In this document: positions 2,464 to 40,929 of the stretch, one piece after another
Layout: every line of letters starts with the position of its first letter
How positions within the stretch are numbered: the stretch's first letter is position 1
NCBI RefSeq assembly: GCF_001194135.2
Contig: NC_068982.1
Coordinates: 137,486,811-137,538,917 of the forward strand
From: Octopus bimaculoides
Lineage: Eukaryota
Length of the DNA: 52,107 nt
Direction of reading: 5' to 3'
Program-made: the position numbers and the translations under genes
The notes under the pieces: generated by a model
What the model saw: only the letters and a program-made list of their open reading frames with translations
Databases searched by the model: none
Told to the model about the DNA's origin: nothing

Positions 2464-2572
2464 ATGTGCTGGTTGTACCCAACAACCTTACGCAAACAAG
2501 GTATGCCACATATCTTTGAGTCGACCACTTCTGGAACTTAGACCACTAGAGGATCTGCTGGAGACGTTATTG
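2464..2572 (+). CDS. SPRTN: SprT-domain exon: (x)CAGCTQQPYANKVCHISLSRPLLELRPLEDLLETLL
   Basis: Acceptor taataag|, donor TTG|gtaaat, phase 2 to 0. Aligns by eye with human SPRTN CAGICSYEGKGGMCSIRLSEPLLKLRPRKDLVETLL. Symbol denotes the family; this may be a paralog. Confidence 0.9.
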
Positions 2573-5500: not shown

Positions 5501-8500
5501 TGCAGGAGCAGCTAGAACATGGCCCGAAATTCCACGCGGAAATGAAAAGAATTGAGAAAGAGTCGGGAATGAAACTAGAGGTGATTATAACTAATTTATT
5601 GAATTTATGTAAATTTCTGGCAGTGTTTGTTATTTGGTGTAGAATGTAAGAAACCAGCGCCAAAGAAAATATAATTTAAAATAATCATAAGAAAAAAATT
5701 AACAATTTAGCGCTAGTTTGGAGCATTGCCCAAATATTTAATGTAAGTTATTTTTCAAACGTAGTCTTGTTTATAACAAAAGTGTATTGGTGAGCTTATG
5801 TCTGTCAGCTGCATTTTATAATGTAATACAGCAATCTTTCTTTTGACGCTGTTTATTGAAAATCGGACACGAGTACCTTGCGGCACTTGGGCAATGTGTG
5901 GCTTTTTATGACTTGTATGGAATTCAGTACCACTATGTGGAGGCGCAATGGCCCAGTGGTTAGGGCAGCGGACTCGCAGTCATAGGATCGCGGTTTCGAT
6001 TCCCAGACCGGGCGTTGTGAGTGTTTATTGAGCGAAAACACCTAAAGCTCCACGAGGCTCCGGCAGGGGATGGTGGCGAACCCTGCTGTACTCATTCACC
6101 ACAACTTTCTCTCACACTTACTTCCTGTTTCTGTTGTGCCTGTAATTCAAAGTGTCAGCCTTGTCACACTCTGTGTCACTCTGAATATCCGAGAACTACA
6201 TTAAGGGAACACGTGTCTGTGGAGTGCTCAGCCACTTGCACGTTAATTTCACGAGCAGGCTGTTTCGTTGATCGGATCAACTGGAACCCTCGACGGAGTG
6301 CCAACAACAACAGTATCACTATGTAAACATTACTTTCTAAACTGTAACAGATTATTTGTTTCGTTTTTCTTATCCAATCGTGCTTTCTTCTCAGTTTGAC
6401 GCCGTGCATTTTCTCTCCGAATTCTCAACGGAAACTTACTGTACACAATGTTCTTTAAATAATTTTACTGCTACAACCCGCTTTATGAATAAAATTTCAT
6501 AAAACTTAAAATGGTTGTCTATACTAGTAAATTATACATAGTAAATGATGTACATAGTAAAAATAGCTTTAAACTAACGAAATCGATTACGCGACATCTG
6601 TAATCGCCGAAAGCTTTACTACAAAGTGTAAGTATAAGGTGTTCTGTGTGAAGGTGCGTGGTTTAGTGGTTAGGGTGTTGCACTCACAATTGCTAGATCG
6701 TGAGTTCGATTCCAGGACGAGGGTGGCGCGCTGTGTTCTTGAGCAAAAACACTTCATTTCACGTTGCTTCAGTTCATTTGGTTGTAAATGGGGGATCCCT
6801 GCGATGGAATCTTCTGATGAGTGGAATGTTGGCTCGCTCACCTAACCTGCGAGACGGCATCGTTCGAAGGTTAAAACTATGCAAAGCGCATTGGGACCAA
6901 CAAACGATATCACGGTCAGTACCGTGATATTAAATTCTAACAATTGGCTATTAATGTTACTATATCTAAGAAAAATTCTTAAAAAATAATCTAGTGTCTT
7001 TTATTTCTACAAAATGAATCGAATTGTCTCGTAAATATTACTTAATGAAAGACAGCAAAACAATCCTTAAAATTTCTCTATCGAATTTAGAAACTCGTCC
7101 ATAAGACGTGAGTTGCACGGGAATCCTTCGACTCTTTTCTCTTTAAATGTGTTTTTCTACCCAATATTTACATAATATCCACAGCTTTTTGTACTTAAAA
7201 ATTTGCTTCTCCAGAAACAATTTTACTAGAAAACTACTGAAAAGTCTGCCAATGAATCATTAACCAAAGTCGGTTACATTTTAATCTCTCGCCTAAATAT
7301 CTTTTCTTCTAAAAGGTTTTCCATGAATTCTATTCTGAATATANNNNNNNNNNNNNNNNNNNNNNNNNNNNNNNNNNNNNNNNNNNNNNNNNNNNNNNNN
7401 NNNNNNNNNNNNNNNNNNNNNNNNNNNNNNNNNNNNNNNNNNNNNNNNNNNNNNNNNNNNNNNNNNNNNNNNNNNNNNNNNNNNNNNNNNNNNNNNNNNN
7501 NNNNNNNNNNNNNNNNNNNNNNNNNNNNNNNNNNNNNNNNNNNNNNNNNNNNNNNNNNNNNNNNNNNNNNNNNNNNNNNNNNNNNNNNNNNNNNNNNNNN
7601 NNNNNNNNNNNNNNNNNNNNNNNNNNNNNNNNNNNNNNNNNNNNNNNNNNNNNNNNNNNNNNNNNNNNNNNNNNNNNNNNNNNNNNNNNNNNNNNNNNNN
7701 NNNNNNNNNNNNNNNNNNNNNNNNNNNNNNNNNNNNNNNNNNNNNNNNNNNNNNNNNNNNNNNNNNNNNNNNNNNNNNNNNNNNNNNNNNNNNNNNNNNN
7801 NNNNNNNNNNNNNNNNNNNNNNNNNNNNNNNNNNNNNNNNNNNNNNNNNNNNNNNNNNNNNNNNNNNNNNNNNNNNNNNNNNNNNNNNNNNNNNNNNNNN
7901 NNNNNNNNNNNNNNNNNNNNNNNNNNGACTGCCCCACCCCCTTTAAAATTGCTGGCCTTGTGCCAAAATGTGATCATTACGTTGCGTTGAAATTCCATGT
8001 GAAAGATTTGTTGTAAGGCAAATACTTTTAATCTCATCGGTTTTGTGTTTCACTTAAATCAAAGTGGCTGTGTATTCCTGACACTTGTACTCTTAATAGT
8101 CATCAAGCAGAATCACATGATACAGGGCTCTTAACTGTATATTCTATCGCGTCAGTAAAAGTATTTCGATTTGCACAATATTTTCACAATTACATTATAT
8201 TTGCGCGTTATTAGGGCATCAAAAGAAGTGAGTGGGGGGGGGCACAAGTGGTAAATAGTTTACTGCACAAAAGAAATCACTTTAAACTTGCTAAAATAAC
8301 ATTCCAAGTAGTTTATATGATCGAAAATATAATTTTGTAGTGTTTCTGCTGTTATAATGAGGATTTGATCAGATTTTGCAATTAAAGTAGAAAAATGTGT
8401 AAGTACACAAAAGTAGACATTTTTCATCTTGCTTTGTTCCGTTTTGAAAAATAAGAATTTATTTTATGGTTTGTTTATATTTTGAATTACATGTATAATT

Positions 8501-11673: not shown

Positions 11674-14600
11674 TTGCTATTATGCAAGTGTCGTAATTCC
11701 AAAATGTTACTTTTTCACCATTCCATGGCAAGACCATTTTAATACACTGACAATTTCTGATATCTTGGCAGCCGGAGATACGATAGTTTGACCAAAAGAA
11801 CCGGCTATTGCAAGCAAGAATATTGAAAAAAATAAAACGCCAAATTTGGATATACCACAGTTTAACATTATAGCAACGATATATATACAGTTACCATGTT
11901 TCAAGAAATATGGCATTTAAATATGGAATATTGGAAATTTTTTTTCTGTAGAATTTAATCCAAGAATTGAAGGGGAACTAAGAGAATTTATTTCCAAAAC
12001 GTGGAAAATTCCCGAAGAAGGTATTTACAAATTTCTTTCTAAAATTGTTGAAAACTTGGTATTTAAAAAAAAAATATCAAATTCGTCAATGCTTTCGGGG
12101 TTTTATCATCAAAACGATGTTCTTGCTATAAGTATTGATCTTTATAGAAGTCACATTTGAGAATTGAGCCTTTTCCATGATTCTAAATTTATTCTACAAA
12201 TTGTTAAATATTCTTAGTCTAAATTTAATGAACCAATAAAGTGACCTATGTGGTCATTTGAGTTGCTAGAAATATCAGCCAGGTATCTCGAATGGTACTT
12301 TATCGTCTTTAAAAATAGCTAACATTGTTGGGTAATCAGATTAACTGTCCCGGTTGGAATGTCTTACCGATCTGTTCAGTCAGGGCGGATCCGGGGCTAA
12401 GCAACCGTACATAAAATCCGAGGTAGATATTGCACTATATGTTGTCCTTCCACCTATATGGTAGTATTGCGACATAGATCACTAGCGCTATGACTTCCTG
12501 AATGTTTGTACATGAGCTTGATATTTCAGATTTACAAAGTGGATACATGAATTCCAGTAGTTTCTACATTTGATAAATACCTTGAACAATTATCCTTCCT
12601 TTAAGCCGAAGTCGATTTCCTTCTTCGAAAAGCGGTGGATAATATCAACATTGACAGTTTTGGACAATGAAACAGTCGTTTGATCATACAAGCGAGCAAA
12701 GAAATTAACAAGAAACTAATGGATAAGTCTCATACCATAAAATGCGTTAGCATTAAATTAACCAAGTTTTTCATTAGAAGTTCCTTGAAATTTGCTTTTA
12801 GCTTTTGTCACTTGACTGCGGCCATGTTGGGGCACTGCCTTGAGTTTAGAACATAGTTGATCAGAATATCTGAAAAAGAACAAAAATTTTCACAGGCCAA
12901 TGGGGTCCAATTAGACTCTAATGACCATATTTTATAACACCCGTATGACTGGAAATTTTTAACTAAAAATTTGTATGTGCATACAGTAGGACCTCGGTTT
13001 TCGAACAACTCAGATCACGAATAAATCATGCTANNNNNNNNNNAAACGAACTAACGAACTAACTAACTAACTAACTTTGGTTGTAGAACAAACAACAAAT
13101 GTAAGGTTATCCAACTAATATATCAAATCTCGAACATTTAATCACATATAAAACAATGCTTTTTCTATACATAGAATTTTTTTATACGTGATAGACTGTA
13201 CTCTTTTTCTATATGCCTGTCTAAATGAAGTATTGTTTCATATTCTGTGATTTTTGTGCATCTGTATTCTATGTATAAGAAAAAGCATGATGTCTTTATA
13301 TGTGATTAAATGTTCGAGATGTGATATATTAGTTGGATGACCTTAAATTTGTTGTTTGTTCTCCAACCAAAGTTTGTTATACTCCTCATTTACTTGAGCA
13401 CTTCTCTTGCAGTCCTATTAACCCTCTTGTTCCTAATAAAAATCAATCACTATTATTATTGATATATATATATATATATACATATAAAAGCACAATTTAT
13501 TCGCGATCGTGGTACTATTGTACATAAACTATTAAGTCATGAGATTTAAATAAGAATCGTAAAAGTTGCATAACTTTTAAAATCTGCTGGATCCCTAAGG
13601 GATCCCGCCGGCCCACGAAGGGTTAAGTATATGTATGTTAGGCACTCACCATATTCATTAAGTTACTCTAAGAAAGTGCTAAAACCTTTCCAAATCCTAT
13701 GCTTCGATTTGGTTTCAAAAACAGAATCAAGACAGCTTAAATTTCTTTATTTCAAACATTTGTAATTCAAACGCAAATTTAATTTATTTACCCCCATTGT
13801 ATTTATCCCATTTGAGCTTTCGGAATTGACAAATATTTGATTGTAATAAATGAAACTAGAAAAGTTAAACCTTTACAAACTGGAAATTTTCGAAGATAAA
13901 ACAGCCATCTAATTAATTTTGTGCAAATTGTTTGAAAATTGTTTCCATTTCCCAGGTCTTTACTAATCAGATCCAACAACAAGGAGGATTATCTTGCTTT
14001 CTTTAGATCGATTATCAAATTTGATAAGCAACTATAAAAAGAAATTTAGACAATACTTAATATATTCTACCAAGCTTATTTCTTACAGCAAGCGGATATA
14101 TTTAATATGAAATACAACCATGAATTGTTTCCGTTTTAAATCTTAGGATTAGTCTTTCATTTACTTGAATTCTGGGTTACTGATGTGGAAAAAATCAGAA
14201 CATCTTAGCATTCTTTCTTTCCAAGAAAGAATTCTTAATTCTAGCTGTTCGAAGGCTGAGAATGTAAATTAATCTGTATTTGTCTATGAATACTGTCAGA
14301 TCTAAATATAAATGTGTACAACAATGTAAAATTACTTCCCGAACTAAAATGGGTCAAGGATTCTGTTTTGTAAAATATTTAGTAGACTGGATGGATTTTC
14401 AGGCAGCTTATTTCTATGTGAAGTATAAAAATCGATCGGATAATTTCGTCTGTGATAAAATAAAACCCTGCTCTTTTTTACCTTCTTAGATTTCTAAGAT
14501 TGGACATCCTTTATACTTAAACAATTTTTTGTATTAGACTTTCTCGGTCTTTTCAACGTAACACTAAAATAGAAATGCAATTCAGAAAGTTTAGTAGTTT

Positions 14601-16855
14601 TGCTTGGACTTCAAAACTAGAATCGCCGCAGTTTTGAAAGAAAACCCAATCTAATTATGGTTCAGTTATTAGTGGAAACCAGTTTACTCGATTTATGTTA
14701 CAAATGTTCATTGAGAAAGTGGTAATGTTGTAGCTTTGTTTCCTCGATGACTTTATTTTATAACCCGTTTTTTTTTTTTGGTGGGGGCGTTAGATTTGTA
14801 TAACATCATAAAAAGTATCTTCGGACAGAGTTCAAAAGTTAAACAAGCAGAGAATGGTTTCCAGGTGAGACGAAATCTGAGCAGATGATCCCTGTGTCTA
14901 TTAAATGTTAGTCTATTAAATGTTAACTCGGTAATCTAGATATGAAGTGTTATCACTGAGGAGTAACCACTTTTGAAGAGGATTTCATCTATACTCAATA
15001 AAATGTAAAAAAAANNNNNNNNNNAACTATACCAATCGAATACACTTCAAAGAATATTTTAAGTTTCCTTTAAACAGAGTTGTATGGTTACCAAATTTTC
15101 TTTGCGACCACGTAGTTCCGAGTTTACACTGGACAAGTTTCTCCGATAAAATTGAATTCAGTAAGCGAGTTCACCATTTTTGTAAATTTTCATAAGACTT
15201 GCTTACTAAGATATCCCATCTTTTAAAGAATTATGGGTGTTGTAAAGTGTAGCTGCCACAAATGATAGACTGGGGTCGACATTTGCTAAGCCAACCCACA
15301 AATTGACTGTTTTAGGCCTCAGTCTGTTAGCTTCATGTCTGGAGAATATAATATTCGATTGTCTAAATCCATTCGGTGTACTGAAACCATTAATGCTACA
15401 TTACCAGATCTGTTCTTCATAAGCATAGAACATTCTGGTCAGAGCCTTAAATTTTGCAAGATGGAACGAGACTTTTCTAGCTGTAAGTTTAAGAGGGTCC
15501 TTCGGATACATATGACCCCACTTGACTTTCTGGCGCTCAGAATTATGCACCAGTTGAGCTTCCTACAGGACCTAACTCTTGTTTGAAAAACATTTTAGGA
15601 AGTATAAAAATTTCATTAGCAATTCAAGTTTCATGTATAACGGTAACGCAGCGGTATCTTTTAGTACATTAAAGGTTAAATCTAATATTCGAGCGACTTA
15701 GAGGTAAGTAAGCCATCGGGAGGATGGTATGGCTCCATCTTGGAACAGTAGGTGAAGCACGGTCTGTAAAAGACGTTACATAATGGAATATTAAATACAC
15801 TGGGTACATAATGGAATATTAGATACACTGGTAGGAAGTGGATGGTCTGAGATGGAATTCCTATGATCACAGAATTGCTTGAACATAGCTGACCTGAAGC
15901 TAAACAACGCCAAAGATAAATAGCGAACCATTTTTGATTCCCAATTGTTGGCATTTAATTCTTGCTAAAGATGTTTAGAAATCTTCACAGGAGCTCTTTA
16001 TTTCATAAATCTAGTCTCGTTGATCTTAATCACCAATTACAAAATGGAATTGAATTCGGATTTGAGTTTGTGTGCATTATATTAAAACTTTCAAACACAA
16101 ACTCTAGCTCTAAATGTACAAACATGAATTTCTTACAACGACGACTTTTCAAATTGTTTCTTGAAGCTGCTGTCAATATAACTTCTAAACTCTTGTACCA
16201 CACCCTATTAGTTTTTTTTAATTTATTTTATTTCATTTTTTTTTTTTCCTTTTTTGCGGACAATGACCAGATTTCAATAATTTACTTTTAAACATTCTCT
16301 TAAAGCTATGAAAAAACCCGCGTCACCTCCAGGAAGTGATTTCTCAAGCGATAATTCTGACCTGACTCTCAGTCCTTCATGGGGTAGCAATTTCGATTTT
16401 TTTGGCAGTTCAGGTTAGTAAGAACGAAATATCTTTCTCTCGCCTTTTTCTTTTCTTTCTTTCGTTTTCTCTCTCCCTCTCACATCGTTCAGCCATTTGA
16501 TTGCGGCCATGTTGGAGCACCGCCTTAAAGGGTTTTAATCGAAGTAATCAACCCCAGGACTTGTTTTATAGGTCTCTTTTGCCGAACCGCTATGTTACGG
16601 GGATATATATATACAAACATTGGTTGTCAAGCGATGATGGGTGAGGGAACATAGATGCATGTATATATATTATACGACAAGCTCCTATTTTCCGTCTACC
16701 AAATCCACTCAAGGCTATGGTCGGCCCGAGGCTAAAGTAGAAGACACTTGCCCAAAGTGCCATGCATTCGGAATGAACCCAGAACCATGTGGTTGAGAAG
16801 CAAACTTCTAAACTCTCTTTCTCTCTCTTTCTCTCTCTTTCTCTCTCTTTCTCTC

Positions 16856-16886
<31 letters not shown>

Positions 16887-16889
16887 CTT

Positions 16890-16947
<58 letters not shown>

Positions 16948-17612
16948 TCTNNNNNNNNNNNNNNNNNNNNNNNNNNNNNNNNNNNNNNNNNNNNNNNNNN
17001 NNNNNNNNNNNNNNNNNNNNNNNNNNNNNNNNNNNNNNNNNNNNNNNNNNNNNNNNNNNNNNNNNNNNNNNNNNNNNNNNNNNNNNNNNNNNNNNNNNNN
17101 NNNNNNNNNNNNNNNNNNNNNNNNNNNNNNNNNNNNNNNNNNNNNNNNNNNNNNNNNNNNNNNNNNNNNNNNNNNNNNNNNNNNNNNNNNNNNNNNNNNN
17201 NNNNNNNNNNNNNNNNNNNNNNNNNNNNNNNNNNNNNNNNNNNNNNNNNNNNNNNNNNNNNNNNNNNNNNNNNNNNNNNNNNNNNNNNNNNNNNNNNNNN
17301 NNNNNNNNNNNNNNNNNNNNNNNNNNNNNNNNNNNNNNNNNNNNNNNNNNNNNNNNNNNNNNNNNNNNNNNNNNNNNNNNNNNNNNNNNNNNNNNNNNNN
17401 NNNNNNNNNNNNNNNNNNNNNNNNNNNNNNNNNCTCTCTCTGTCTCTTTCTCTCTCTGTCTCTTTCTCTCTCTGTCTCTTTCTCTCTCTGTCTCTTTCTC
17501 TCTCTGTCTCTTTCTCTCTCTGTCTCTTTCTCTCTCCGTCTCTTTCTCTCTCTGTCTCTTTCTCTCTCTGTCTCTTTCTCTCTCTGTCTCTTTCTCTCTC
17601 TCTCTTTCTCTT

Positions 17613-17645
<33 letters not shown>

Positions 17646-17752
17646 TTCTCTCTCTCTCTTTCTCTTTCTCTCTCTCTCTTTCTCTTTCTCTTTTTCTCTC
17701 TCTCTTTCTCTCTCCGTCTCTTTCTCTCTCTGTCTCTCTCTCTCTGTCTCTT

Positions 17753-17783
<31 letters not shown>

Positions 17784-17908
17784 TTCTCTTTCTCTCTCCG
17801 TCTCTTTCTCTCTCTGTCTCTTTCTCTCTCTGTCTCTTTCTCTCTCTGTCTCTTTCTCTCTCTCTCTTTCTCTCTCTCTCTTTCTCTTTCTCTCTCTCTC
17901 TTTCTCTT

Positions 17909-17941
<33 letters not shown>

Positions 17942-17954
17942 TTCTCTCTTTCTC

Positions 17955-18015
<61 letters not shown>

Positions 18016-21000
18016 TTGTGCTTTCAAAAAAAAAACAACCTGAGATGCGTTTCTGCAAAATCTCCATTTGTATTGATTTACCATTATGACCGGCTTAACC
18101 ATTCTTTCTCAGAACTGCTTCCTTTTAACTTGCAATAATTCGAATCCTTTTTAATTTGCAAACCTCCCGCCCTAATCTATGGAAGGCAGTTTTACTAAGG
18201 TCAAACGTTGACTACTAAGTCTGTAGCAAGATTTCGGTTTTTAACTTCTATATGTTATGCACAAAATGGAGCAAGTTCCTATGACCCTACAATACCCAAC
18301 CGTAGCTAATAGCTAAGTTCCTTTTGTTATGAACAAAAGGATATCCAACGCTTCATTCACGCTTGTGAATTTTCTCGGTCAATGCTTGTCTTTATTCTAA
18401 GCCAGAGTATTTTGTTGAAAACGATTTCAATATTTATGTATTTAGGAAAAAAATCCACTTATTGTAATCACATTCGTTCGGACTTACATCATTAAAGAAT
18501 TTCTACTTGACTTCAAATCTGCCAGATATTTATACTTTCTCAAATGAAGGAAAAATTAGTCTACAGACATGACCATTTTACAAATTCCCTTTGTGAACAC
18601 GTAGTTTTCAGTTCAATCTCAGTGCGCGCCACATTGTGCAAGTTCCTTCTACTCTGAACAAATTCAATAAGCGAGTTCACTATTTTCTTCTCTTTTCATG
18701 ACTCCATTTCTGAAATCTTCAATTACTTTTAATGGTTAGATCTGTGAAGAGCTACTGCAAATGGTCATCTGGAGCTAGATTTCGACATATGATAAACCGG
18801 CCCACCTTAAGTTTAAGACCTCTATATCTGTTGCAGAGAGTATTATCGCACTATCTAATCGTCTAAGAAATATGTTCAGTTTCAACATTTCATGAATATT
18901 TCAATAAATGTCGACATTTTTTTGTTTCAGATTTTTCTACTGATGAAGAACCAGGTGAGCTTAGCTACCCAAAACTTAATCCAGGAGACATAGTATATAT
19001 TCAAGTCTAGTAAACCCTAAATTCTGTTTTGATTTTTCAGTTTAACCTAAATCTTAAAAGTTGTTGAATGATTAAAGATAGTTTTGTCGACACGTGTTGG
19101 AAGAGAGACGGCCGATTAGCAGTCATTAGAGATTGTTTTGCGATAGTCATTTCGTCTCTCGACGCTCTTGGTTCAAATCCCACTGAAGCCAACTTTGCTT
19201 TTCATACTTTCGGAGGTGATAATGTACAAGTCATTTCGACATTCTCTTATTCTTTGTTCTCTCTGATTTCTGGTAAAAAATCGGCTGTCGTCAGACCTGG
19301 GGAGATATGAGCTCCTCCATGTCTAAAAATGTTATATCATGACAAGGATCTTATGATTCCATCAAAGAATTGAGGATTCAAGCCAAAGTAAGGCAATATT
19401 GACACATTTATCTTGCAGTTCGAAAATCTTCAATTCTAGGTTTTCTGTACAAATCTATTTTACCAAATGGACCATTTCGAACGTATTTATTGATTTGAGC
19501 CCAGTCCAAATCTGCTTTTCACATTACATCGCTGTAAGATAATGTAACAAATTGGATTCACCATCAACTTTGAGTTGTCGTTTTATCAAATAAATGTAAC
19601 GTTTTCTTTTGAGATTGTAAAAAATATTTCAAAAACCGGGTTGATAGTTGACTGTTAGGATTTGATCACTAGTTGAAGCAGACTGACAAATTTCAATTTA
19701 TGATTGAACATTACCAACTTGTTAGAATAAACTTATCGCTAGAATTATGAAATAACTTCGTTCAGATTATGTAGATGACTTGCATTTAATTTCATTTGCT
19801 TTAAAGAATTTGTAATCAATGTTTTAATGTTTGACTTTCTAAACTAGATAAATTTGCATCCAATGAAAAAACCAAAATGAAAGTACCAAAGGCCGGTTAG
19901 TATAACTGATATTTTTATTTTTAACATTTCGCATTTCTTGACTGATTTGAAATCGTCGACAGTTTGACGCAACATTTTAAACAATTTAGTAATTTCTGCG
20001 TCGGAATAATCAGCTATCTAATAAGGCGAAAATAGATAATCAAAACCAAAAGTTTTGAAACAGGCAAAATAACAAATATTTTTTCACAAACGTTTAATGA
20101 CCAATACAAACTAGTTGCTATTCCATGCATGGCAACTCTATAATTGAAGAGTATTTTTAGTCAGTAAATTTAATGGTACTTCTTGAATTGAATTTCCGAC
20201 GAATTTAAATTAAAATGGATGAGTTGAACTCTGGATGTAGTAAATGTATGGTTTAATTTTGATTTTTCATTGCAAATTTACTTATGTCGTTGGTGGCGAT
20301 CGACAGACGTCAACGCAAATATATCCCTGTAACCTTTACCTCAAGACTTTTAATTTGAAAAATTAACTTGTCTCTTAATAGTTTTAACTTTCATTTAAAC
20401 TAAAATCGTTACACTTCCAGCTAAATCAGTTACACCACTGATGGAAAATAAAAGTGAGTAAAGTTCAATTATTTCAAAAAACTAATATTTGGGGATAAAA
20501 TGAGCTGTTCATCAAAAAAAGTTCTGGTTTTTCATTTTTCATAATTAACATTCAATTTTCTAGCTAGAACCGCTTTAACTAGAGCTACATCACTTACTCT
20601 TCCAACAAAAGTTAAACATGACTAAAAATTTAATTAGAATTAAAGCAATTAAGTTCATGTAGGGATGAAATTCCTTTCACTAAAATCTCTCACTCGAGCA
20701 CAAACTCTTTCAATTTTGAACAAGAACAGTAAAGACTTATCATTTGAGACTAATATTTTAGGTTGAGTAAAACTAAATTGTGCATTTTAGTTGTTGCTTG
20801 GTCTCTTTGTTCAGAATTTAATTTTAAATCACAGCTCCAGTTAAATCAGTAACCCCACTAAAGGAAAATCGATGTAAGTATAGATCTTACGGTTAATTAT
20901 TCGTGAATAAGATGTTCAATCTAGCTTCTCGCTTGCTTTCTGATCTTCGTAATTTTTTCTTGCTAAAACCGTTTTAACTTTAACAGCACTTACACAACCA

Positions 21001-24000
21001 ACAACGAGAGTAAAAATTAAATTCTAATTAAAACTATAATTATCATTGAAATTCCTTTCAATAAACTCCGTCACTCAAGCTCAAATTCTTTCACCATTGA
21101 ACAAGAAAAGTAAACTGATTTAAACCTAATATTAATGGATGAGTACAGATAAAATGTCGATTTTAGTTGCTTGGTCTCTTTGTTCAGAATTTAATTTTGA
21201 ATTCATTTTAGCACCAAAAACCACAGCTCGTGTTAAACCAGTAACCCTACCAAAGGAAAATAGATGTAAGTATAGATCTTACGGTTAATTATTCGTGAAT
21301 AAATTCAATCTAGCTTGTGGCTTGCTTTCTGATCTTCGTAATTTTTTCTAGTTAAAACCGTTTTAACTCCAGCTACGGCACTTCCATCACCAACAAGAAA
21401 AGATAAACGAGAGTAAATATTAAATTCTAGTTAAAACTATAATTGTCAAGTAGATGAAATACCTTTCAATAAAATCCCTATCCACCATTGAACAAGTAAA
21501 CTTTTTCTCATTTAAGACTAATATTAATGGAGGAGTACAGCTAAAATGTCGATTTTTACTTGTTGCTTGGTCTCTTTGTTCAGGATTTAATTAAAATTTT
21601 TTTTTATCTCCAAAACCTCAGCTCAGGGTAAATCAGTAACCCCACCAAAAGAAAATCGATGTAAGTATAGATCTTACGGTTAATTATTCTGATCTTCGTA
21701 ATTTTTTCCAGTTAAAACCGTTTTAACTCGAGCTACAACACTTACACCACCACCACCACCACAAGATAAACCAGAGTAAAAATTAAATTCTAATTAAAAC
21801 TATAATTGTCATAGAAATTCCTTGCACTAAAATCTCTCACTCGAGCACAAACTCTTTCAACATTGAACAAGAGAAGTAAAGACTTAGCATTTAAAACTAT
21901 TTTAGGTTGAGTACAGCTGAAATGTGCATTTTAGTTGTTGCTTGATCTCTTTCTTCAGAATTTAATTTTTAATTCTTTTTAGCTCCAAAAACCTCAAGTC
22001 CAGTAAGATTATCAAAGGAAAATCGATGTAAGTATAGATCTTACGGTTAATTATTCGTGAATAAGATGTTCAATTTAGCTTGTCGCTTGCTTTCTGATTT
22101 TCGTAATTTTTTTCCAGCTAAAACTGCTCCAACACAAGATCTATTACTAACACCACCTCCGACAGAAAATAAGTGATTAAAAAATTTAATTTCGATTAAC
22201 ACTGAGACATATACGGATGAAATCTAGATTTTTACAAGACTGCTTGACATGTAAAGTTAAAAGGAGGGCTTGCGAAGATATAAGAGAACAGCTGGTCTTC
22301 ATCAAGACCCAGCAAGTAGAGAGAAAAAAATGCAGATTAGCGCTGTAGAACTTTAGATTTAGCTTGCCTTCTGTTCGTAACGTGTTCACTTCGCTTCATA
22401 TCTTTCTTGAAGTACAAACAATCGATGTCCAATCTTATCTCAAATTCTTCAATGGTATAATAGATTGAAAAATATAATTTGCAATACTTTCTTTTTTAGC
22501 TTCTAAAATCTGTCATTCAAGTTCAAACCCTTTCACCCTTGAACAATCGTAATGACGTTTCATTTAAAACAAATGTATGTGGAGTACAGCATGAAACGTT
22601 GAGCAAAAAAAAAAAACGGTGGCGTTTGTTGATATTCCTTAACAAATCACTTCGTAACTTTGTGCGTTCGAGAAGGGGTGGAATGAAGTAACAATATCTC
22701 TTAACAAGAAAGATATCGATATAAAACAATGCTTTGATATGTATTCGTCCAATCCATGTCAGCATAGAAAAACGGACGTGAAATGAAGGCTTTGGACGAT
22801 ACTTAATTTCTATTTAGCGGCTCAAACTCTTTTGCTATCAGCGAACAAGAAAAGTAAATAACGTTGATTTAAATAAAGCTAATATTCGTGAACTACAGGA
22901 TAACAGAAGGGAGATGACGTTTCGATTTTAAGTAGTATAGTCTTTTTATTCATAATTCAATTTTAAATCCGTTTTTAGCTACTAAAGTGACCGCGACCCG
23001 AACTAAATCAGTACCACCACCACCGACTAAAAATAAAAGTAAAAATCAATTTTTAATTCAATAAAACTAAGAGCATTGTAGAGTTATAAGTCGTACGGTT
23101 CGCTTTTTATTTCCTCTTCACATTACCATCGGTAAACAAAAAAGTGAAAGTCAATTTTCAACGAAATCAATTGGAAGAAGAACGTTGTTGAAATTAACTC
23201 TTTTCATAACTTTTTAATAACTTAGTCACTTATAGTTTATACTTATAAAGATATATAAAGTCATGATATACTTGTCAATCTTGCTTTCTAAAGATCTTGG
23301 ATGCTGAAACACAACTGAGTGGATCTCGTGGAACAGTTAGTTTCCAGATCGTATCGTACTAACACTTTATCCGGACTAGAAATATTCTCAAATTTCACTA
23401 AACAGATGATCGCTTTGGGAGGAAGCTTGCCATATATCAGGAGCTGGTGCAGCAGTGCAGAAACCAAGGCTGGCAGGCAGGTTGCGAGGCAATAGTGGTG
23501 GGCTGTCGAGGGTTTTGTATGGCATTCATTCTGCAAAGGTCTGACTGGGTTTGTTATTGGTGCAACAAAGAGGGCTATAAATTTCATTATTAAAGCTGCA
23601 AAGATGGCCTCTTGGGGACTTTGAGTAAAGAAGGGCAGACTAGTGATTTGCTGCTACAGGGATGCAAACTGATGAAGTTCCAGTTTGAAGACCCAAACTT
23701 GATCAACCCGGGGTGAGTTAACTGGGCGAAGTGAATATTATGTTGAAAGACCCTACCTCCACTTCCCTTTGAAACACGAGAAACATCACAGATGATGCAT
23801 TCCAAAGCATCTGCGAGACATCTTAAAACTAACATACGAAAATATAAGCGTCGCGATAATACGAGTCGCTTTCTATATACCTTCAATGTTTGCGTCGTTC
23901 AAATGAATATTTTCAATCAAATGACATTTTTATTTATTTAGCAAAGAAATTACCTGAAAGTTCTAAAAATTCAGCGGCGTAGGAAAAAGATAAATGAAGT

Positions 24001-26222: not shown

Positions 26223-29200
26223 ATTTGACTGTGGCCATACTGGGGCACCGCCTTGACTTATAGTCGAACAAATCGTCCCGGGACTTTTGAAAGCTTCGTA
26301 CTTATTTTATCGATCTTTTTGCCGAACCACTAACTTACGAGGACTTAAACGCACCAATACCGGTTATCAAGCGGTGGTGGACACACGGATACACACACAC
26401 GACAGGCTTTCAATTTCCGTCCACCAAATCTACTCACAAGGCTTTGGTCGACCAGAGACTATAGTCAACACTTGCCCAATATACCACGCAATGGGAATGG
26501 ACATGAAACCATGTGGTTGGGAAGCAAGCTTATCACACAGCCATATGTAAATATACTGCAGAAAGAGTAGAGCTGAGGCTCCCTACACAAAGTAAGTTTT
26601 GCCCTCTTTTTGAAAATGCAATAGTTTGCGTACTCTATAATTTTATTCCTTGATGTTGGACAACTTCAAAATTTTAAACCATCAAATTAAGCATAGCAAT
26701 TTCCCCCTTTTTTTTTCCTACTCACAGCCCTACTTAGGAGTGCTTATCCCACTGCTATGAGAAATACTACAGGAGAGTAAGACCTCATTGAGCAGTATTT
26801 CCTTCAATTTTTTTGCTAAGCGTGGGCTAATTTTCTCTTTACAAAGTATGTGCGCTTCCTTGTTAGCAACCATCTTCAATTAAGAATGTTCGATCGCAAC
26901 TTAAGCTTCGTGTGTGCACATTTCCTTTGCTCTCTAATTATTAAGGTAGTCCATTGCTGTTGACTTTCAACCCATCTAGTCTTAAGCTTGGTTTCGATTT
27001 CTTGTACCTTTAATATGTAGAAACGTAGTGCATCGATTCCTATGTTGATTCCCGTCACCTCCCTTCGTTTCGCGAATCAATAACAAATCCTTATTAAGTT
27101 CTCTCCTACCCTTGAATGTCTCCCTTCGATTCAATTGAAAATAAATATCCCGTTCCACCTGTATTGATCATAGTGTATTGATTATATTGGTTTTATCTTC
27201 TAAAGATTATAGATACCTATAATATTAGTAATTTTAATTTTTAGCCGCTGAATCTTCTTCAAAGACTGCAACAATGAAGAAAAAGAGTAAGTAAAGATCG
27301 ATTTCCTACAAAATCAGATTTAACGTGTCTGAAACCTACTTTTCTGTTCATCGCGTTATTTGAGTCTTATTGGTCAGTTTGTTACTAGGCCGTCAGCAAA
27401 TTCATACGCAGACTCTCAGCCCCTTGACCACCCCTTCTGTTCATATTTCTCACTGGATTTGATTTTAAGTTTCGAACTAACTGTTACTCATAAACAAGTA
27501 TGGCTTAGTAAGATGTTTCACGTTTTTGCTAATTCTTTGAACTGTCTGTTATTGCGAGCAGACATGGGCACCCATTCGATTCTTCTGTACTGACTCTTAA
27601 ATATCAATAACTAGAGCTCTTTTGACCAAAATCTCCTCTTCCTGCAAATGACTGTCCGATTTATTGAAATGTCGAGACAATACTTGTTCTTCCTGAATAA
27701 ATCCTTACATCTAAAGATGAAGTGCAATGATATTCAAATCTTGTCTCTTAAAGATTATAACTGCTGATGTAGTTACATTTGTCTCCAAACAAGAAATAAA
27801 TTTTACGCTACTAAAAATACTGAAAGTCCATCTAAAACAAACAAAAAGAAATATGAGTCGAGATCAATTTGCAGCCAATTTTTCCCCATTAATAATGGAT
27901 TTAAAGCAACAACATCACAAGGTGGGTTATGTTCTATATTGTCTTGTCACTTTGCTTCTCACTTTATCGATATTCTATATAGAACGATTACTGTTCTGAA
28001 GCTACCAAAAATAGAAGGGGTAAAGAAGACTGACCGTCTGAGGCGACACTTTATGCAGGGTAACACTTGTACGTCTACAGTGTAAACCCGTATAGGGTTC
28101 GGGGCTTATCTGTGGCGGCAATCTCAAGGCCTATCCGTGCAGGATTCTTACTACGCTACTAGTTGCAAAGGAAATAGTGATAAGTATCCCAAAGTGAGAA
28201 ACTGCTTTTCCTTACAATCGAAATTTTATTTCTAGATGCTATTTAGGTGATTATTTCTAGATACTGTTTAGATGATTATTTCTAGATACTCAATGTTAGA
28301 TATTTTTGATTTTACCTAAGAATATTTTTCTTTCCAGAATTACTAACAAATGGGAAGACGAAAATGGCTTCTAAATTCACTGAGAGTAATGTTTTTTTTT
28401 TTAATATATATTTAATTTATATTTAGTGGAGTAAGCATAGCAAGCTCTGTATAATCAATTAGAAGCTGGTCTTTTGTTCAATCACAAGTTTTTCTACGAC
28501 ATAAGGTGGGTAGACAAATCGGCAATTGTTTGTGATGGTTTTAGAGACTCTGCACTAATCTTTATGATTCGTTCTATGTTGAAATCCCGCAGAAGTCATT
28601 CCTTCAAGGTTGATAAAATACCCGTCAAGTACTGAGATCGATATAAAGTAGTTAACCCACTCGTCCCACAAATTTCAGATCTCCGGCCTAAAATATCATG
28701 GCAGAACTCAGAGTATCTGTAAAAATTAATTACAGTATACGACCCCATATGTTTTGCGCTCAAACTCTCACCGAAGTAGAGTTTATCGTTTTGAAGCCGA
28801 TAGTACTTATCTAAGACAGGCTACGAACCGCTCTGACACGGCCATCTTGGTCCACTCATTTGGCGTCACTGATTCGACGCTGCCTTATTTGGCATGTATT
28901 GTCACTGGGACATTTTGGCACCGTAAAAACTTACTGCTCTAGTTAACAACTAACTTGTAATCACTTCTAAATTTTCAGCTTCCGGCTCCACATTGTGTAT
29001 GTGATGGCTGGTGAAATAGTAATGAAATGTGGAAAACAGTTTTCTTACAATGGGTTTCTGTAGATCTTTGACAAAGTAGAACCGAGTTAATTTAAATTTC
29101 AACGCTGTGAGCAGAAAAATTAAGGAGAAACAAGATGTATTAGATAACGCCTATTACCACAAACACTTCTCCATCTTTCCTCTTTGTATTTCTGTATGTA

Positions 29201-31121
29201 CGTGTGTCTATTTGCTTCTGTCACTAAAATAAGCCATTACCAAAATAGATTCGGTGTCCACTCAGCCGTACAAAATAGCCAGCGTCAAAATAGCCACACT
29301 AAATCGTTTCATTTGGGAGGTTTGCTTTAAAGGGAAATCTAACGTAAATTCTAACAAAACTTGAATCTTTGCTTTTAATTCGTAATTTTTTTCACATGCT
29401 ATGCCGTGGCACATCAGGAAATAGATTCGAGTCTTTTTGCAAATAAGCCATAGACCAGTGATTCACCTTGTTTGGAAATTATCCGGGTACTTAGTATTGT
29501 TACGCTACAATTGACTAAATATCGATATCTACTATTTTCAGTGATTCCGAGGTGAGTTGTCTCGGCTGGTCTGTGACATTCAGGTGTTCTTTAACACTCG
29601 GCGTCATTTGAAGAGCTTTCCTTGAACGCTATTCCGCAGCAAATTTGACCAAAATACATACTATGTAAGTGCGACCAATAATGTTCACATTACTTGAACG
29701 GCTTTTAATTCGGTACTTAAATTTAATGTTTCAGTTATCAAGAAATACAAATGGCAATGTTATGGTGCATGTCAAAACGAGGCTCCAATGTTTGGTCGTA
29801 TAGAGCGTTTAATTAACAGACCACCAAATACAAGCGAAAAATGGTTTTTGCTCCACGAAAAAAATTGTGGAGGAAGTTTCGTTAGATTCGATTAAATCGG
29901 TAAGTTTAATATTAATGAAACTGAACACTTGTGTGCGTGTGTGTGTGCGTGTGTGTGTGTGTGGGNNNNNNNNNNNNNNNNNNNNNNNNNNNNNNNNNNN
30001 NNNNNNNNNNNNNNNNNNNGGGGGGGGGGGGTGACAAACGACCTACTTTCCATAAGTAGTCGTTTGCAGCTGTTTAACACTAGATCAGTTTTCATTGATC
30101 AAAAGCCTTCCAACCGTGATCGTTCCATCTATTTTAGCTACGGCTACATTATTTTAAATTTTCTAAAACTGGTTGATTTAAAGGAATTTGGGGATCTTTT
30201 TTCGTTTGACGTACAAAGCGATATTTTTGAAAATATCTACATAATGTACTTTTGTATGTTAATTACGAAAATGTTTTTGTAGCAAGCATTCAGGATAGAT
30301 TTCTAGTTTGAGGATCCCTTTTTATCCCCTTCTTCCCACCAGTCTTAGAGACTATGTAACGCGTCATGGGTACTGTCTTTCTTATCTCTAAAAAATGAAG
30401 AAAAAAAATAACTCTTTCTGGTGTTTTATTCGATGGGCGACGCAGCTCGGAGGCCAGGGAGTCTCTCAAAGTCGAGCTGCTGCATCTCCATATTAACAGT
30501 TCGGATATATCGGACACGTGTTCAGAATGTCACAGGAAAGAATCGCAAGACAGATTCTTCAAGCCAAGCCAACCGGCAGCAGAACCTGCGAATGACAAAG
30601 AACGAGATGGTTAGATAATATCCATAGTTCTTGTTGGTCACACTTGAGCATCAAGCCAGAAATCAGTTGCTTCTGATAGGACCATATAGAGGAGGCTCCT
30701 GAAAACTCTATCCCCACATTATCATAAGAATACTGGGCGGGAAAAATTGCTGGATGGGCAGAATTCTAACTTAAAATTGTAATTGCATGCACGCAATTGT
30801 AAACATTTAATGTTGTCTGAGTTACGAAAGTTTGATTTCAATCTTTATCTATTCTTGGAATTTGCTTTCTATACACATAGGGGTAGGAGAGGCTGTGTGG
30901 TAAGTAGCTTGCTTACCAACCACGTGGGACCAGGTTCAGTCCAACTGCGTGGAATCTTGGGCAAGTGTCTCCTACTATAGCCTCGGGCCGACCAAAACCT
31001 TGTGAGTGGATTTGGTAGACGGAAACTGGAAGAAGCCCGTCTCTCTCTCTCTCTTTCTCTCTTTTTCTCTCTCTCTCTCTCTTTCTCTTTCTCTCTCTCT
31101 TTCTCTCTTTATCTCTCTCTA

Positions 31122-40777: not shown

Positions 40778-40929
40778 CTGGAAAAAGAAAAGAAAAAAAA
40801 AATTGTTAAATATAGAGGAAAAAAAAATTGTTAAATATAAAAGAAAAAAAATCGTCATAAATTAAGTTAATTTAAAACAGTGCTTCTCAAACATTTTTAA
40901 CTGTTGTTAAAATTCATAAAACAAAAAGC

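What the first reader, a model, noticed from the sequence alone, without database searches (positions are those of the whole stretch)
20400..23040. Tandem exon-cassette array building a repeated CDK-site + KEN-box tail on the SprT protease
Seen: a ~390-bp exon+intron unit repeated five times plus a diverged sixth. Exon lengths differ (33, 39, 54, 39, 45, 60 nt) but all are multiples of 3 with intact GT/AG. Spliced: AKSVTPLMENK-TPVKSVTPLKENR-SPKTTARVKPVTLPKENR-SQGKSVTPPKENR-SPKTSSPVRLSKENR-STKVTATRTKSVPPPPTKNK. That is four KEN motifs (two as KENRSP, formed across junctions) and four S/T-P-x-K/R sites (TPVK, TPLK, TPPK, SPVR). Known: KEN (extended KENxxP) is the APC/C-Cdh1 degron, S/T-P-x-K/R is the full CDK consensus, and human SPRTN/DVC1 has been reported to be an APC/C-Cdh1 substrate. 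Inference: a multivalent, phospho-tunable degradation module created by exon duplication, whose degron count could be dialled by skipping symmetric exons.
Basis: partly seen in the sequence, partly recalled or inferred. Interest (0 to 1): 0.85.

Follow-up and report, generated by a model that had tools for sequence, protein, structure and literature searches.

The report
Repeated mini-exon array in octopus SPRTN paralogue
A stretch of five tandem "mini-exon plus intron" copies in an octopus-specific second copy of the DNA-repair protease SPRTN really is spliced into the protein, where it builds part of a floppy, positively charged linker, but the idea that it is a purpose-built, multi-copy cell-cycle destruction signal is not supported by comparison with other octopuses.

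Summary
Window 20421-22400 contains five tandem units of 361-414 bp. Each starts with a mini-exon of 33, 39, 54, 39 or 45 nt with AG/GT borders, in phase 1-1. Splicing these with the neighbouring exons reproduces RefSeq model XP_052821850.1 of Octopus bimaculoides exactly. The "diverged sixth" exon (22979-23038) appears in no gene model of three species.

The gene is an octopod SPRTN paralogue, not the canonical SPRTN, which lies on another chromosome and has a UBZ. The array is not a free tail. It is part of a disordered linker between the SprT domain and a second, C-terminal zinc-binding subdomain (29735-29895). The first zinc-binding subdomain is hidden in the assembly gap 7344-7926.

The degron reading is weak:
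- O. vulgaris and O. sinensis have four units and one annotated tail KEN.
- The orthologue of E5 reads NENR, and E1 reads MENK or IENK.
- Argonauta and a related transcript have no KEN.
- KEN is never preceded by D/N/E.

What is conserved is E-N-[K/R] at exon ends, positive charge (+21 to +33 in the three named species; +9 in an unidentified related transcript) and predicted disorder. Cassette skipping of these symmetric exons is annotated in the sister species. My best reading is a birth-and-death exon array that builds a variable-length basic tether. Interest is modest.

The parts
20421..20453 (+). Mini-exon E1 (33 nt, phase 1-1), encodes (A)KSVTPLMENK
   Evidence: AG/GT borders. Present in all three O. 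bimaculoides models. The O. vulgaris copy AKSVKPRIENK is intact but in no model there.
20835..20873 (+). Mini-exon E2 (39 nt), TPVKSVTPLKENR. Uses an internal CAG acceptor 15 nt downstream of the ancestral one.
   Evidence: Included in XP_052821850.1. Skipped in A0A0L8IF26 and XP_014770613.1.
21212..21265 (+). Mini-exon E3 (54 nt), SPKTTARVKPVTLPKENR
   Evidence: In all three O. bimaculoides models.
21622..21660 (+). Mini-exon E4 (39 nt), SQGKSVTPPKENR
   Evidence: In all three O. bimaculoides models.
21983..22027 (+). Mini-exon E5 (45 nt), SPKTSSPVRLSKENR. By position and flanks it is the orthologue of O. vulgaris STKSSTPLKPVTLPNENR (KEN replaced by NEN).
   Evidence: unit bU5-vU4 identity 0.88.
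20421..22400 (+). The five-unit tandem array (units of 414, 377, 410, 361 and 398 bp). Each unit holds an A mini-exon, an exon-like B block and an exon-like C block inside its intron.
   Evidence: TRF period 392, unit alignment, identity matrix, B and C blocks.
22118..22172 (+). B5 block, (S)KTAPTQDLLLTPPPTEN. It is 55 nt, so out of frame if spliced. Its O. vulgaris counterpart KTASTQDVLLTPPPTENK is a used exon.
22979..23038 (+). Unannotated in all three species.
   Evidence: Identity to O. vulgaris is about 86% by my count of the two sequences, like its flanks (84%).
2465..5580 (+). Metalloprotease-subdomain exons: 2465-2572 (CAGC...ETLL), 3517-3558 (HEMIHAYLWVTDNH), 5506-5580 (EQLEHGPKF...KLE)
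   Evidence: Pfam SprT-like E=9.6e-18.
7316..7343 (+). Start of the exon that in O. vulgaris, O. sinensis and Argonauta encodes the first zinc-binding subdomain (VFHEFYSEY...). It is cut off by the N gap 7344-7926.
11952..19895 (+). Helix and acidic linker exons: 11952-12020, 16306-16413, 18931-18954 (a 24-nt micro-exon), 19848-19895. All are phase 1-1.
27245..28385 (+). Distal basic cassette exons: 27245-27286 (SAESSSKTATMKKK) and 28338-28385 (KLLTNGKTKMASKFTE)
29735..29895 (+). Last coding exon: the second zinc-binding subdomain (ZBD2), ending in TAA
   Evidence: Pfam SPRTN_ZBD E=4e-19. Matches human SPRTN structure 6MDX, E=2.9e-11.

Best explanation
The region is a tandem array of five 'mini-exon plus intron' modules in an octopod-specific paralogue of the DNA-protein-crosslink protease SPRTN (Octopus bimaculoides). 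It lies within the run of phase-1 introns that spans the gene from 7.3 kb to 29.7 kb.

Shown:
- The five mini-exons are symmetric, keep their reading frame despite indels, and are spliced in the public models.
- They encode about 70 residues of Lys/Arg/Pro/Ser/Thr-rich sequence.
- This belongs to a predicted-disordered, strongly basic linker between the SprT domain (protease subdomain plus first zinc-binding subdomain) and a second, C-terminal zinc-binding subdomain.
- At least four units existed before the O. bimaculoides / O. vulgaris split, and O. bimaculoides has one more.
- Exons in this tail are gained, shortened by acceptor shifts of 15 nt, skipped and killed from species to species.

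Inferred:
- The array grew by unequal crossing-over.
- Its product works mainly through bulk properties. It would be a flexible, positively charged tether that spaces the two DNA-binding zinc modules and adds non-specific dsDNA contacts, like the low-complexity basic region next to the ZBD in human SPRTN.
- Cassette-exon inclusion changes its length and charge.
- The S/T-P-x-K sites may let CDK-type phosphorylation weaken DNA binding.
- The KEN tripeptides are most simply a by-product of copying one exon whose conserved 3' end reads x-E-N-[K/R].
For: Splicing: the exon chain reproduces XP_052821850.1 exactly. Three independent models share 24-54-nt exons, which ab initio prediction alone rarely places.

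Frame: the A exons are 33, 39, 54, 39 and 45 nt. The B blocks are 47, 47, 61, 64 and 55 nt.

Architecture: O. vulgaris and O. sinensis proteins show MPD-ZBD1-linker-ZBD2, with two Pfam SPRTN_ZBD stretches. So does a transcript contig from run SRR8281686.

Disorder: AlphaFold on O. vulgaris P0158 gives pLDDT below 50 for residues 230-448. The SprT domain scores 70-96 and ZBD2 about 80.

Charge: the basic part has net charge +21 (O. bimaculoides), +24 (O. vulgaris) and +33 (A. hians). Each A exon carries +1 to +4.

Age and turnover:
- Cross-species unit identities (0.88-0.93) are at least as high as within-species ones (0.79-0.90).
- O. vulgaris and O. sinensis have 4 units.
- The exon at 23942-23990 is dead, with an in-frame TAG and a lost donor.

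Splicing variety: four cassette exons vary among 12 annotated isoforms.

Precedent: human SPRTN needs both the ZBD (ssDNA) and a low-complexity basic region (dsDNA, electrostatic) (PMC7534798).
Against: No transcript reads were seen; splicing rests on public gene models. DNA binding by the tail is inferred from composition only.

The last 13 nt of the A exons (the K-E-N-R codons) are 0.92-1.00 identical across units and species. That is higher than the exon 5' parts (0.5-0.8) and the adjoining intron across species (0.62-0.73). So something more specific than bulk charge is constrained there. It could be a peptide motif (E-N-K/R, possibly KEN) or a purine-rich splicing enhancer next to the donor.

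dN/dS values are noisy and high for the whole gene: MPD 0.64, array 0.56. The tail may therefore be largely unconstrained.
Confidence: 0.6

Rival explanations
1. The array is a multivalent APC/C-Cdh1 degron made of KEN and KENxxP boxes. Overlapping CDK sites gate it, and exon skipping sets how many boxes the protein carries.
For: There are four KEN in a predicted-disordered segment, two of them as KENRSP. In Acm1 a CDK site (SPAK) overlaps the C-terminal end of KENxxP, much like KENRSPKT here (PMC3690534). SPRTN is a reported APC-Cdh1 substrate (PMC7782752, PMC7467358). The K-E-N-R codons are the best-conserved part of the A exons. E2 inclusion differs between models.
Against: KEN number is 4, 1, 1, 0 and 0 in O. 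bimaculoides, O. vulgaris, O. sinensis, A. hians and the SRR8281686 transcript. The K is replaced by N in the E5 orthologue and by M or I in E1, and is T in B-type exons, while E-N never changes. The residue before KEN is L, P, P or S, not the D/N/E that PMC3690534 reports as most frequent. KENxxP is not kept in O. vulgaris (KENRST or KENRSK). The only KEN exon of O. vulgaris/sinensis is constitutive. The canonical octopus SPRTN has no KEN. The four KEN are copies of one ancestral exon, not independent occurrences.
Confidence: 0.12
2. Neutral filler. The duplicated mini-exons are tolerated, near-neutrally evolving insertions in a disordered linker of a fast-evolving paralogue. They have no function beyond not breaking the frame.
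For: dN/dS between O. bimaculoides and O. vulgaris is high throughout: MPD 0.64, acidic linker 1.8, array 0.56, distal tail 0.77. E1 has 3 non-synonymous changes and 1 synonymous change. Exon 5' parts diverge faster than the introns. Exons die or go unused in one species or the other. Copy number differs between species.
Against: Frame is preserved in all A exons through several indels but in none of the B blocks. The E-N-[K/R] exon ends are invariant. Net positive charge is kept over much deeper divergence.
Confidence: 0.23
3. The conservation of the KEN codons reflects RNA rather than protein. AAGGAAAAT next to the GTAAGT donor would be a purine-rich exonic splicing enhancer that such short exons need in order to be recognised.
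For: The conserved block runs across the exon-intron border (AAGGAAAATCGAT|GTAAGTATAGAT). The exons are only 33-54 nt. GAAAAT is also kept in E1- and B-type exons whose peptides otherwise differ.
Against: Of the three substitutions seen in this block among seven A exons, two are synonymous (AAG to AAA, CGA to AGA), as expected for protein-level constraint (my comparison of the exon sequences printed). No splicing assay is available, and enhancer motifs are not defined for cephalopods.
Confidence: 0.3
4. Annotation artefact. The mini-exons are intronic repeats wrongly threaded into models by gene predictors.
For: No reads were inspected. Models differ on E2. The RefSeq models also bridge an assembly gap artificially.
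Against: Three pipelines and releases agree on 24-54-nt exons. The orthologous exons are in O. vulgaris and O. sinensis models from gapless assemblies. Frame is preserved. All have strong GTAAGT or GTGAGT donors.
Confidence: 0.03

Closest known systems
Titin PEVK region (from general knowledge, not tested here)
   Same: Tandemly duplicated short exons encode a low-complexity, Pro/Lys-rich disordered segment. Differential exon inclusion changes the segment's length.
   Different: The octopus array is far smaller (5 units against more than 100). It sits in a DNA-repair protease rather than a muscle spring. Here the intron is duplicated together with the exon, at 79-93% unit identity.
Human SPRTN (DVC1/Spartan): ZBD plus basic region (BR) DNA-binding module
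   Same: It has a SprT metalloprotease with HEMIH and a third His, and a zinc-binding subdomain of the same family (Pfam PF22934; 6MDX match E=2.9e-11). A low-complexity, positively charged segment follows the ZBD.
   Different: The octopus paralogue has no SHP box, PIP box or UBZ. Its basic segment is 116-200 residues rather than about 10. It ends in a second ZBD. The true octopus SPRTN orthologue is a different gene (P0203).
KEN-box APC/C degron (ELM DEG_APCC_KENBOX; Acm1 KENxxP with overlapping CDK site)
   Same: KEN tripeptides lie in disordered sequence. Two are followed by xSP, as in Acm1 (PMC3690534).
   Different: There is no D/N/E before KEN. The K and the +3 P are not conserved between octopus species. 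No D-box accompanies them. Function is untested.
S/T-P-x-K motifs of linker-histone H1 C-terminal tails (SPKK-type; from general knowledge)
   Same: Both are Lys/Pro/Ser/Thr-rich, disordered and highly basic, with S/T-P-x-K/R sites that double as CDK consensus sites.
   Different: The octopus repeats carry one Glu each (x-E-N-K/R). Their charge density is lower (+12 over 70 residues). No DNA-binding data exist.

Membership tests
SPRTN / SprT-like metalloprotease family | HExxH zinc site plus a downstream third His (HEMIH...HGP.F); Pfam SprT-like | tested here: met
   HEMIHAYL at 3517-3558 and EHGPKF at 5506-5580. PF10263 E=9.6e-18 on P0162.
SPRTN / SprT-like metalloprotease family | Spartan-type zinc-binding subdomain (C-x3-C...H-x3-C) | tested here: met
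   PF22934 E=4e-19. 6MDX match E=2.9e-11, with the C, C, H, C positions aligned. This is the second copy; the first lies in the N gap.
Canonical SPRTN orthologue (as opposed to a paralogue) | C-terminal tail with SHP box, PIP box and UBZ4 | tested here: not met
   Regex scans find none of these in P0162, P0230 or P0010. A UBZ4 is found in P0203 and P0202, which are encoded on other chromosomes.
KEN-box APC/C-Cdh1 degron | KEN tripeptide in an accessible, disordered region | tested here: met
   Four KEN in the O. bimaculoides tail. The tail of the O. vulgaris orthologue is predicted disordered.
KEN-box APC/C-Cdh1 degron | Flanking consensus: D or N most frequent before KEN, Pro at +3 (PMC3690534) | tested here: inconclusive
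   The residue before KEN is L, P, P or S, never D, N or E. Pro at +3 occurs in 2 of 4 (KENRSP) and in none in O. vulgaris (KENRST or KENRSK).
KEN-box APC/C-Cdh1 degron | Conservation of K, E and N in orthologues | tested here: not met
   The E5 orthologue reads NENR. E1 reads MENK, IENK or MENK in the three Octopus species. A. hians and the SRR8281686 transcript have no KEN.
KEN-box APC/C-Cdh1 degron | Cdh1-dependent, KEN-dependent turnover | not testable with these tools
   Needs stability assays.
CDK phosphorylation-site cluster | Several S/T-P-x-K/R sites in disordered sequence, conserved as a cluster | tested here: inconclusive
   Four full sites in O. bimaculoides, 2 in O. vulgaris and 3 in A. 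hians, at non-equivalent positions. The T is replaced by K, I, M or A in homologous repeats. Phosphorylation cannot be tested.
Tandem exon-duplication array with cassette splicing | Exon and intron duplicated together; exons symmetric in phase; frame kept; variable inclusion | tested here: met
   Inclusion differences are shown (from gene models, not reads).

The most novel reading that the evidence does not exclude
Octopods carry a second SPRTN-type protease with a new architecture. It has a protease subdomain, a ZBD, a variable-length basic repeat tether built from a birth-and-death exon array, and then a second ZBD. It has no p97, PCNA or ubiquitin-binding motifs. Under this reading the x-E-N-[K/R]-S/T-P repeat is a genuine short linear motif. 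It could be a phospho-regulated Cdh1-binding KEN box in O. bimaculoides, or another partner site. Its copy number would be tuned by exon duplication and skipping, giving cell-cycle or tissue-specific control of a crosslink protease.
Probability: 0.12. Interest if true: 0.6.

Novelty: new member of a known kind. Interest (0 to 1): 0.3.

Why it matters
If the array only builds a basic tether, it is a tidy small-scale example of how tandem duplication of symmetric mini-exons lengthens a disordered linker, and how such exons are born, shifted and lost within one genus. That is useful for annotation but not surprising.

The wider context is more interesting. Octopuses have a lineage-specific SPRTN paralogue with two Spartan-type zinc-binding subdomains and none of the usual recruitment motifs. 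This bears on how DNA-dependent proteases couple DNA-structure recognition to activity.

If the repeats were true KEN/CDK degrons, it would show degron dosage evolving by exon duplication. The comparative data make that unlikely.

Tried and rejected
1. I first thought the array lay inside the protease domain, between the protease subdomain and the only visible ZBD. The O. vulgaris, O. sinensis and Argonauta orthologues resolved this. The first ZBD exon runs into the N gap 7344-7926, and the ZBD at 29.7 kb is a second copy.

2. I asked whether each 390-bp unit is an older triplication of a ~130-bp exon-intron module (blocks A, B and C). Peptide resemblance is suggestive, but DNA-level tests against shuffles were inconsistent. 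E1-B3 and B3-C2 gave 0/500 shuffles reaching the observed score; other pairs were not significant. This is left as a note.

3. I tested for a transposable-element origin. The unit is found nowhere else in the window or in the Argonauta locus. A genome-wide check was not possible.

4. I tested for recent, species-specific expansion or concerted evolution. This was rejected as the main story, because cross-species unit identities equal or exceed within-species ones.

5. The first word-indexed protein search missed the O. vulgaris and O. sinensis orthologues. The exhaustive HMMER search and a second search with P0004 found them.

6. The look-up of encoding contigs found nothing for P0001 or P0004. 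It worked for the longest isoforms, P0234 and P0230.

7. A literature search for run SRR8281686 found nothing, so the species of that transcript is unknown.

8. A search for papers on a cephalopod SPRTN paralogue listed none that mention SPRTN among the ten results shown.

Full report
**What is at the coordinates.**
Tandem Repeats Finder reports a single array in 18-26 kb: 20826-22124, period 392, 3.4 copies, 72% matches. Reading the sequence and cutting at the exon starts gives five units of 414, 377, 410, 361 and 398 bp.

Each unit begins with a mini-exon:

| Exon | Coordinates | Length |
|---|---|---|
| E1 | 20421-20453 | 33 nt |
| E2 | 20835-20873 | 39 nt |
| E3 | 21212-21265 | 54 nt |
| E4 | 21622-21660 | 39 nt |
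| E5 | 21983-22027 | 45 nt |

All have AG acceptors and GTAAGT or GTGAGT donors. All start with two bases of a split codon and end with one, which makes them phase 1-1.

However, it lies about 950 bp beyond unit 5 in much more diverged sequence.

**Whose gene it is.**
The window has a single HExxH (HEMIHAYL, 3517-3558) with SPRTN-like flanking exons at 2465-2572 and 5506-5580. It also has a Spartan-type zinc-binding subdomain (ZBD) exon at 29735-29895.

Protein searches returned three Octopus bimaculoides models that map at 100% identity to the window:
- A0A0L8IF26, 183 aa
- XP_014770613.1, 308 aa
- XP_052821850.1, 321 aa, partial

These came, so the window is O. bimaculoides.

Joining sixteen exons (listed in the parts section) gives a 963-nt reading frame. 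Its translation equals XP_052821850.1 apart from that model's first residue, whose codon begins upstream of the first exon in my list. That model includes E1-E5. The two older models skip E2. None includes 22979-23038.

From the exon at 7316 to the last exon, every intron is phase 1, so every internal exon is symmetric. I did not see reads. However, three pipelines agree on exons of 24-54 nt, which I take as indirect evidence that transcripts guided the models.

**Not a free tail, and not the canonical SPRTN.**
An exhaustive HMMER search and a second indexed search found several relatives:
- nine O. vulgaris isoforms (CAI9718177-85);
- three O. sinensis isoforms;
- an Argonauta hians protein;
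- a transcript contig from run SRR8281686.

Searches give the details.

The Octopus orthologues read as follows: protease subdomain, first ZBD, a short helix, an acidic Ser/Asp-rich stretch, a long basic repeat region, and a second ZBD at the very C-terminus. Pfam finds two SPRTN_ZBD stretches in O. vulgaris and in the SRR8281686 transcript, but one in Argonauta.

In the gapless O. vulgaris, O. sinensis and Argonauta loci, the first ZBD is one 210-nt exon beginning IFHEF or IYHSF. In the window that exon starts at 7316 (VFHEFYSEY) and runs straight into the N gap 7344-7926. The first ZBD is therefore almost certainly missing from the assembly, not from the animal. The RefSeq junction 'SEY-K-FNPRI' is an artefact of bridging the gap.

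The ZBD at 29.7 kb is the second one. It matches human SPRTN structure 6MDX at E=2.9e-11, with the C, C, H, C positions aligned.

Octopus also has a canonical SPRTN on another chromosome (P0203, 658 aa; P0202, 714 aa). It has the usual N-terminus and a UBZ4. The window's gene has no SHP, PIP or UBZ pattern. The gene is thus an octopod-wide paralogue, and possibly wider.

**The array in other species.**
I fetched the orthologous loci L002 (O. sinensis) and L003 (O. vulgaris). Window 19801-21801 aligns to L003 21269-23265 at 79%, with off-diagonal repeats.

O. vulgaris and O. sinensis have four units:

| Exon | L003 start | Peptide | Status in models |
|---|---|---|---|
| vE1 | 21876 | AKSVKPRIENK | intact, in no model |
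| vA1 | 22298 | AKSTAQVTPVKENR | constitutive |
| vA2 | 22646 | LKTTAQVKVVTPPKENR | intact, in no model |
| vA3 | 23042 | TKSSTPLKPVTLPNENR | cassette |

Whole-unit identities across species are 0.90 (bU1-vU1), 0.93 (bU2-vU3) and 0.88 (bU5-vU4). These are as high as or higher than within-species values of 0.79-0.90. The array therefore predates the species split, and O. bimaculoides has one more unit.

Exon-length differences trace to an acceptor shift of 15 nt onto an internal CAG (E2, E4) and a 9-nt deletion (E5, vA1). These are always multiples of three. In contrast, the exon-like B blocks inside the same units are 47, 47, 61, 64 and 55 nt.

B- and C-type blocks are used as exons in O. vulgaris (KTASTQDVLLTPPPTENK...ETSLPLDKK) but not in O. 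bimaculoides. One O. vulgaris exon is dead in the window: 23942-23990 has an in-frame TAG and has lost its donor. In Argonauta the comparable repeats (KAKTVKDIPL) sit in one large exon.

This is a birth-and-death pattern.

**Testing the degron idea.**
The background is sound. SPRTN is degraded via APC-Cdh1 in G1 (PMC7782752, PMC7467358). KENxxP with an overlapping CDK site is described for Acm1 (PMC3690534).

The comparative test is unfavourable:
- KEN counts in the tail are 4 (O. bimaculoides), 1 annotated (O. vulgaris, O. sinensis), 0 (A. hians), 0 (SRR8281686 transcript) and 0 in the canonical octopus SPRTN.
- At homologous exon ends the residue before E-N is K, N, M, I or T, while E-N-[K/R] never changes.
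- The residue preceding KEN is L, P, P or S, not the D or N that PMC3690534 reports as most frequent there.
- KENRSP becomes KENRST or KENRSK in O. vulgaris.
- The only KEN exon of O. vulgaris and O. sinensis is present in all 12 isoforms, so KEN dosage is not varied there.

The four KEN are copies of one ancestral exon, so they are not independent evidence.

The last 13 nt of the A exons are 0.92-1.00 identical across units and species. That is better than the exon 5' parts (0.5-0.8) and the adjoining intron across species (0.62-0.73). Within O. bimaculoides, though, the first 45 intron bases are equally conserved. The constraint is therefore on x-E-N-[K/R] plus the donor, at protein or RNA level, and not on the K that a KEN box requires.

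The TP sites are also replaceable: TPLM versus KPRI, and IPLK, MPLT and APLK in Argonauta.

**What is conserved, and the mechanism I favour.**
AlphaFold on O. vulgaris P0158, with a 45-sequence alignment, gives these confidences:
- a confident SprT domain plus ZBD1 (pLDDT 70-96);
- pLDDT below 50 for residues 230-448, which is the whole acidic and repeat region;
- about 80 for ZBD2.

The basic part of the linker has net charge +21 (O. bimaculoides), +24 (O. vulgaris), +33 (A. hians) and +9 (SRR8281686). Each A exon adds +1 to +4.

Human SPRTN needs both a ZBD that reads unpaired bases and a low-complexity basic region that binds dsDNA electrostatically (PMC7534798). I therefore infer that the array encodes part of a variable-length, positively charged tether. 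This tether would link the protease-ZBD1 module to ZBD2 and contact DNA non-specifically. Its length and charge would be altered by including symmetric cassette exons, and its DNA affinity possibly lowered by S/T-P phosphorylation.

This function is inferred from composition, disorder and analogy only. The gene evolves fast overall: dN/dS between O. bimaculoides and O. vulgaris is 0.64 for the protease exons, 0.36 for ZBD2 and 0.56 for the array, on few sites. A near-neutral filler role therefore remains a serious alternative.

**Verdict.**
It is not supported on the central functional claim of a multivalent KEN/CDK degron.

Tandem exon duplication building a repetitive disordered segment is a known kind of event, and the exons are already in public models. 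The two-ZBD SPRTN paralogue is the more noteworthy by-product.

Noticed in passing
window 29735-29895; L003 36924-37079; L004 (SRR8281686 transcript): The gene ends in a second Spartan-type zinc-binding subdomain (C-x3-C...H-x3-C kept). The two-ZBD architecture occurs in O. vulgaris, O. sinensis and an unidentified transcript, but not in the Argonauta hians model or locus. My paper search for a cephalopod SPRTN paralogue listed nothing mentioning SPRTN among the ten results shown.
   Followed up: partly
window 7316-7343 and N gap 7344-7926: The exon for the first ZBD is cut off by an assembly gap. Both RefSeq models bridge it and so lack ZBD1, with an artificial '...SEY-K-FNPRI' junction. Exon 1 (MPVNINRK...RMTS in O. 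vulgaris) would lie just upstream of the window start.
   Followed up: partly
window 23942-23990: The orthologue of the O. vulgaris exon KKLPETSKNSAAKEK is dead in O. bimaculoides. AAG has become TAG in frame, and the GT donor is lost.
   Followed up: yes
window 24797-24844: A 48-nt phase 1-1 exon (AKKTEAPAKVSSVKRK) has intact AG/GT. Its orthologue is used in all O. vulgaris and O. sinensis isoforms, yet it is in none of the O. bimaculoides models.
   Followed up: partly
window 20564-21875 (B blocks at 20564, 20963, 21352, 21712, 22118; C blocks at 20699, 21080, 21846): Each array unit holds two more exon-like blocks. The B blocks (KTVLTPATALPSPTRK-like) have lengths that are not multiples of 3. 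The C blocks (QILSPLNKK-like) are 30 nt, AG/GT-flanked and open in phase 1. This hints at an older ~130-bp module, but DNA-level support is inconsistent.
   Followed up: partly
window 38953-40830, minus strand; L001 34173-35926: A 626-codon open frame encodes an ankyrin-repeat plus SOCS-box protein (Pfam Ank E=2e-81, SOCS_box E=2e-7). A 626-residue gene sits in the same position and orientation downstream of the Argonauta orthologue, which suggests conserved synteny.
   Followed up: partly
L003 26354-29205; L002 26756-29734: A 2.4-2.9-kb minisatellite (22-bp unit in O. vulgaris; 22- and 16-bp periods in O. sinensis; 96-98% matches) fills an intron of the tail region. Blastn of window 19.8-23.2 kb found no counterpart; the rest of the window was not compared.
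   Followed up: no
window 16.6-18.1 kb (gap 16951-17433): A long purine/pyrimidine (GA/TC-type) simple-sequence tract gives strong strand skew (GC skew -0.50). It lies just downstream of the exon at 16306-16413.
   Followed up: no
window about 35.85-36.12 kb (-), 36.72-37.07 kb (+), 42.6-42.9 kb, 46.1-46.4 kb: Several copies of a dispersed repeat share near-identical open frames (for example ...PLRECSGCFYVPPARRPVRRYWQRPRSKW...). It is probably an octopus SINE or other interspersed element.
   Followed up: no
whole gene (window against L003): dN/dS between O. bimaculoides and O. vulgaris is high even in the catalytic subdomain (0.64 over 75 codons) and exceeds 1 in the acidic linker. The paralogue evolves fast.
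   Followed up: partly
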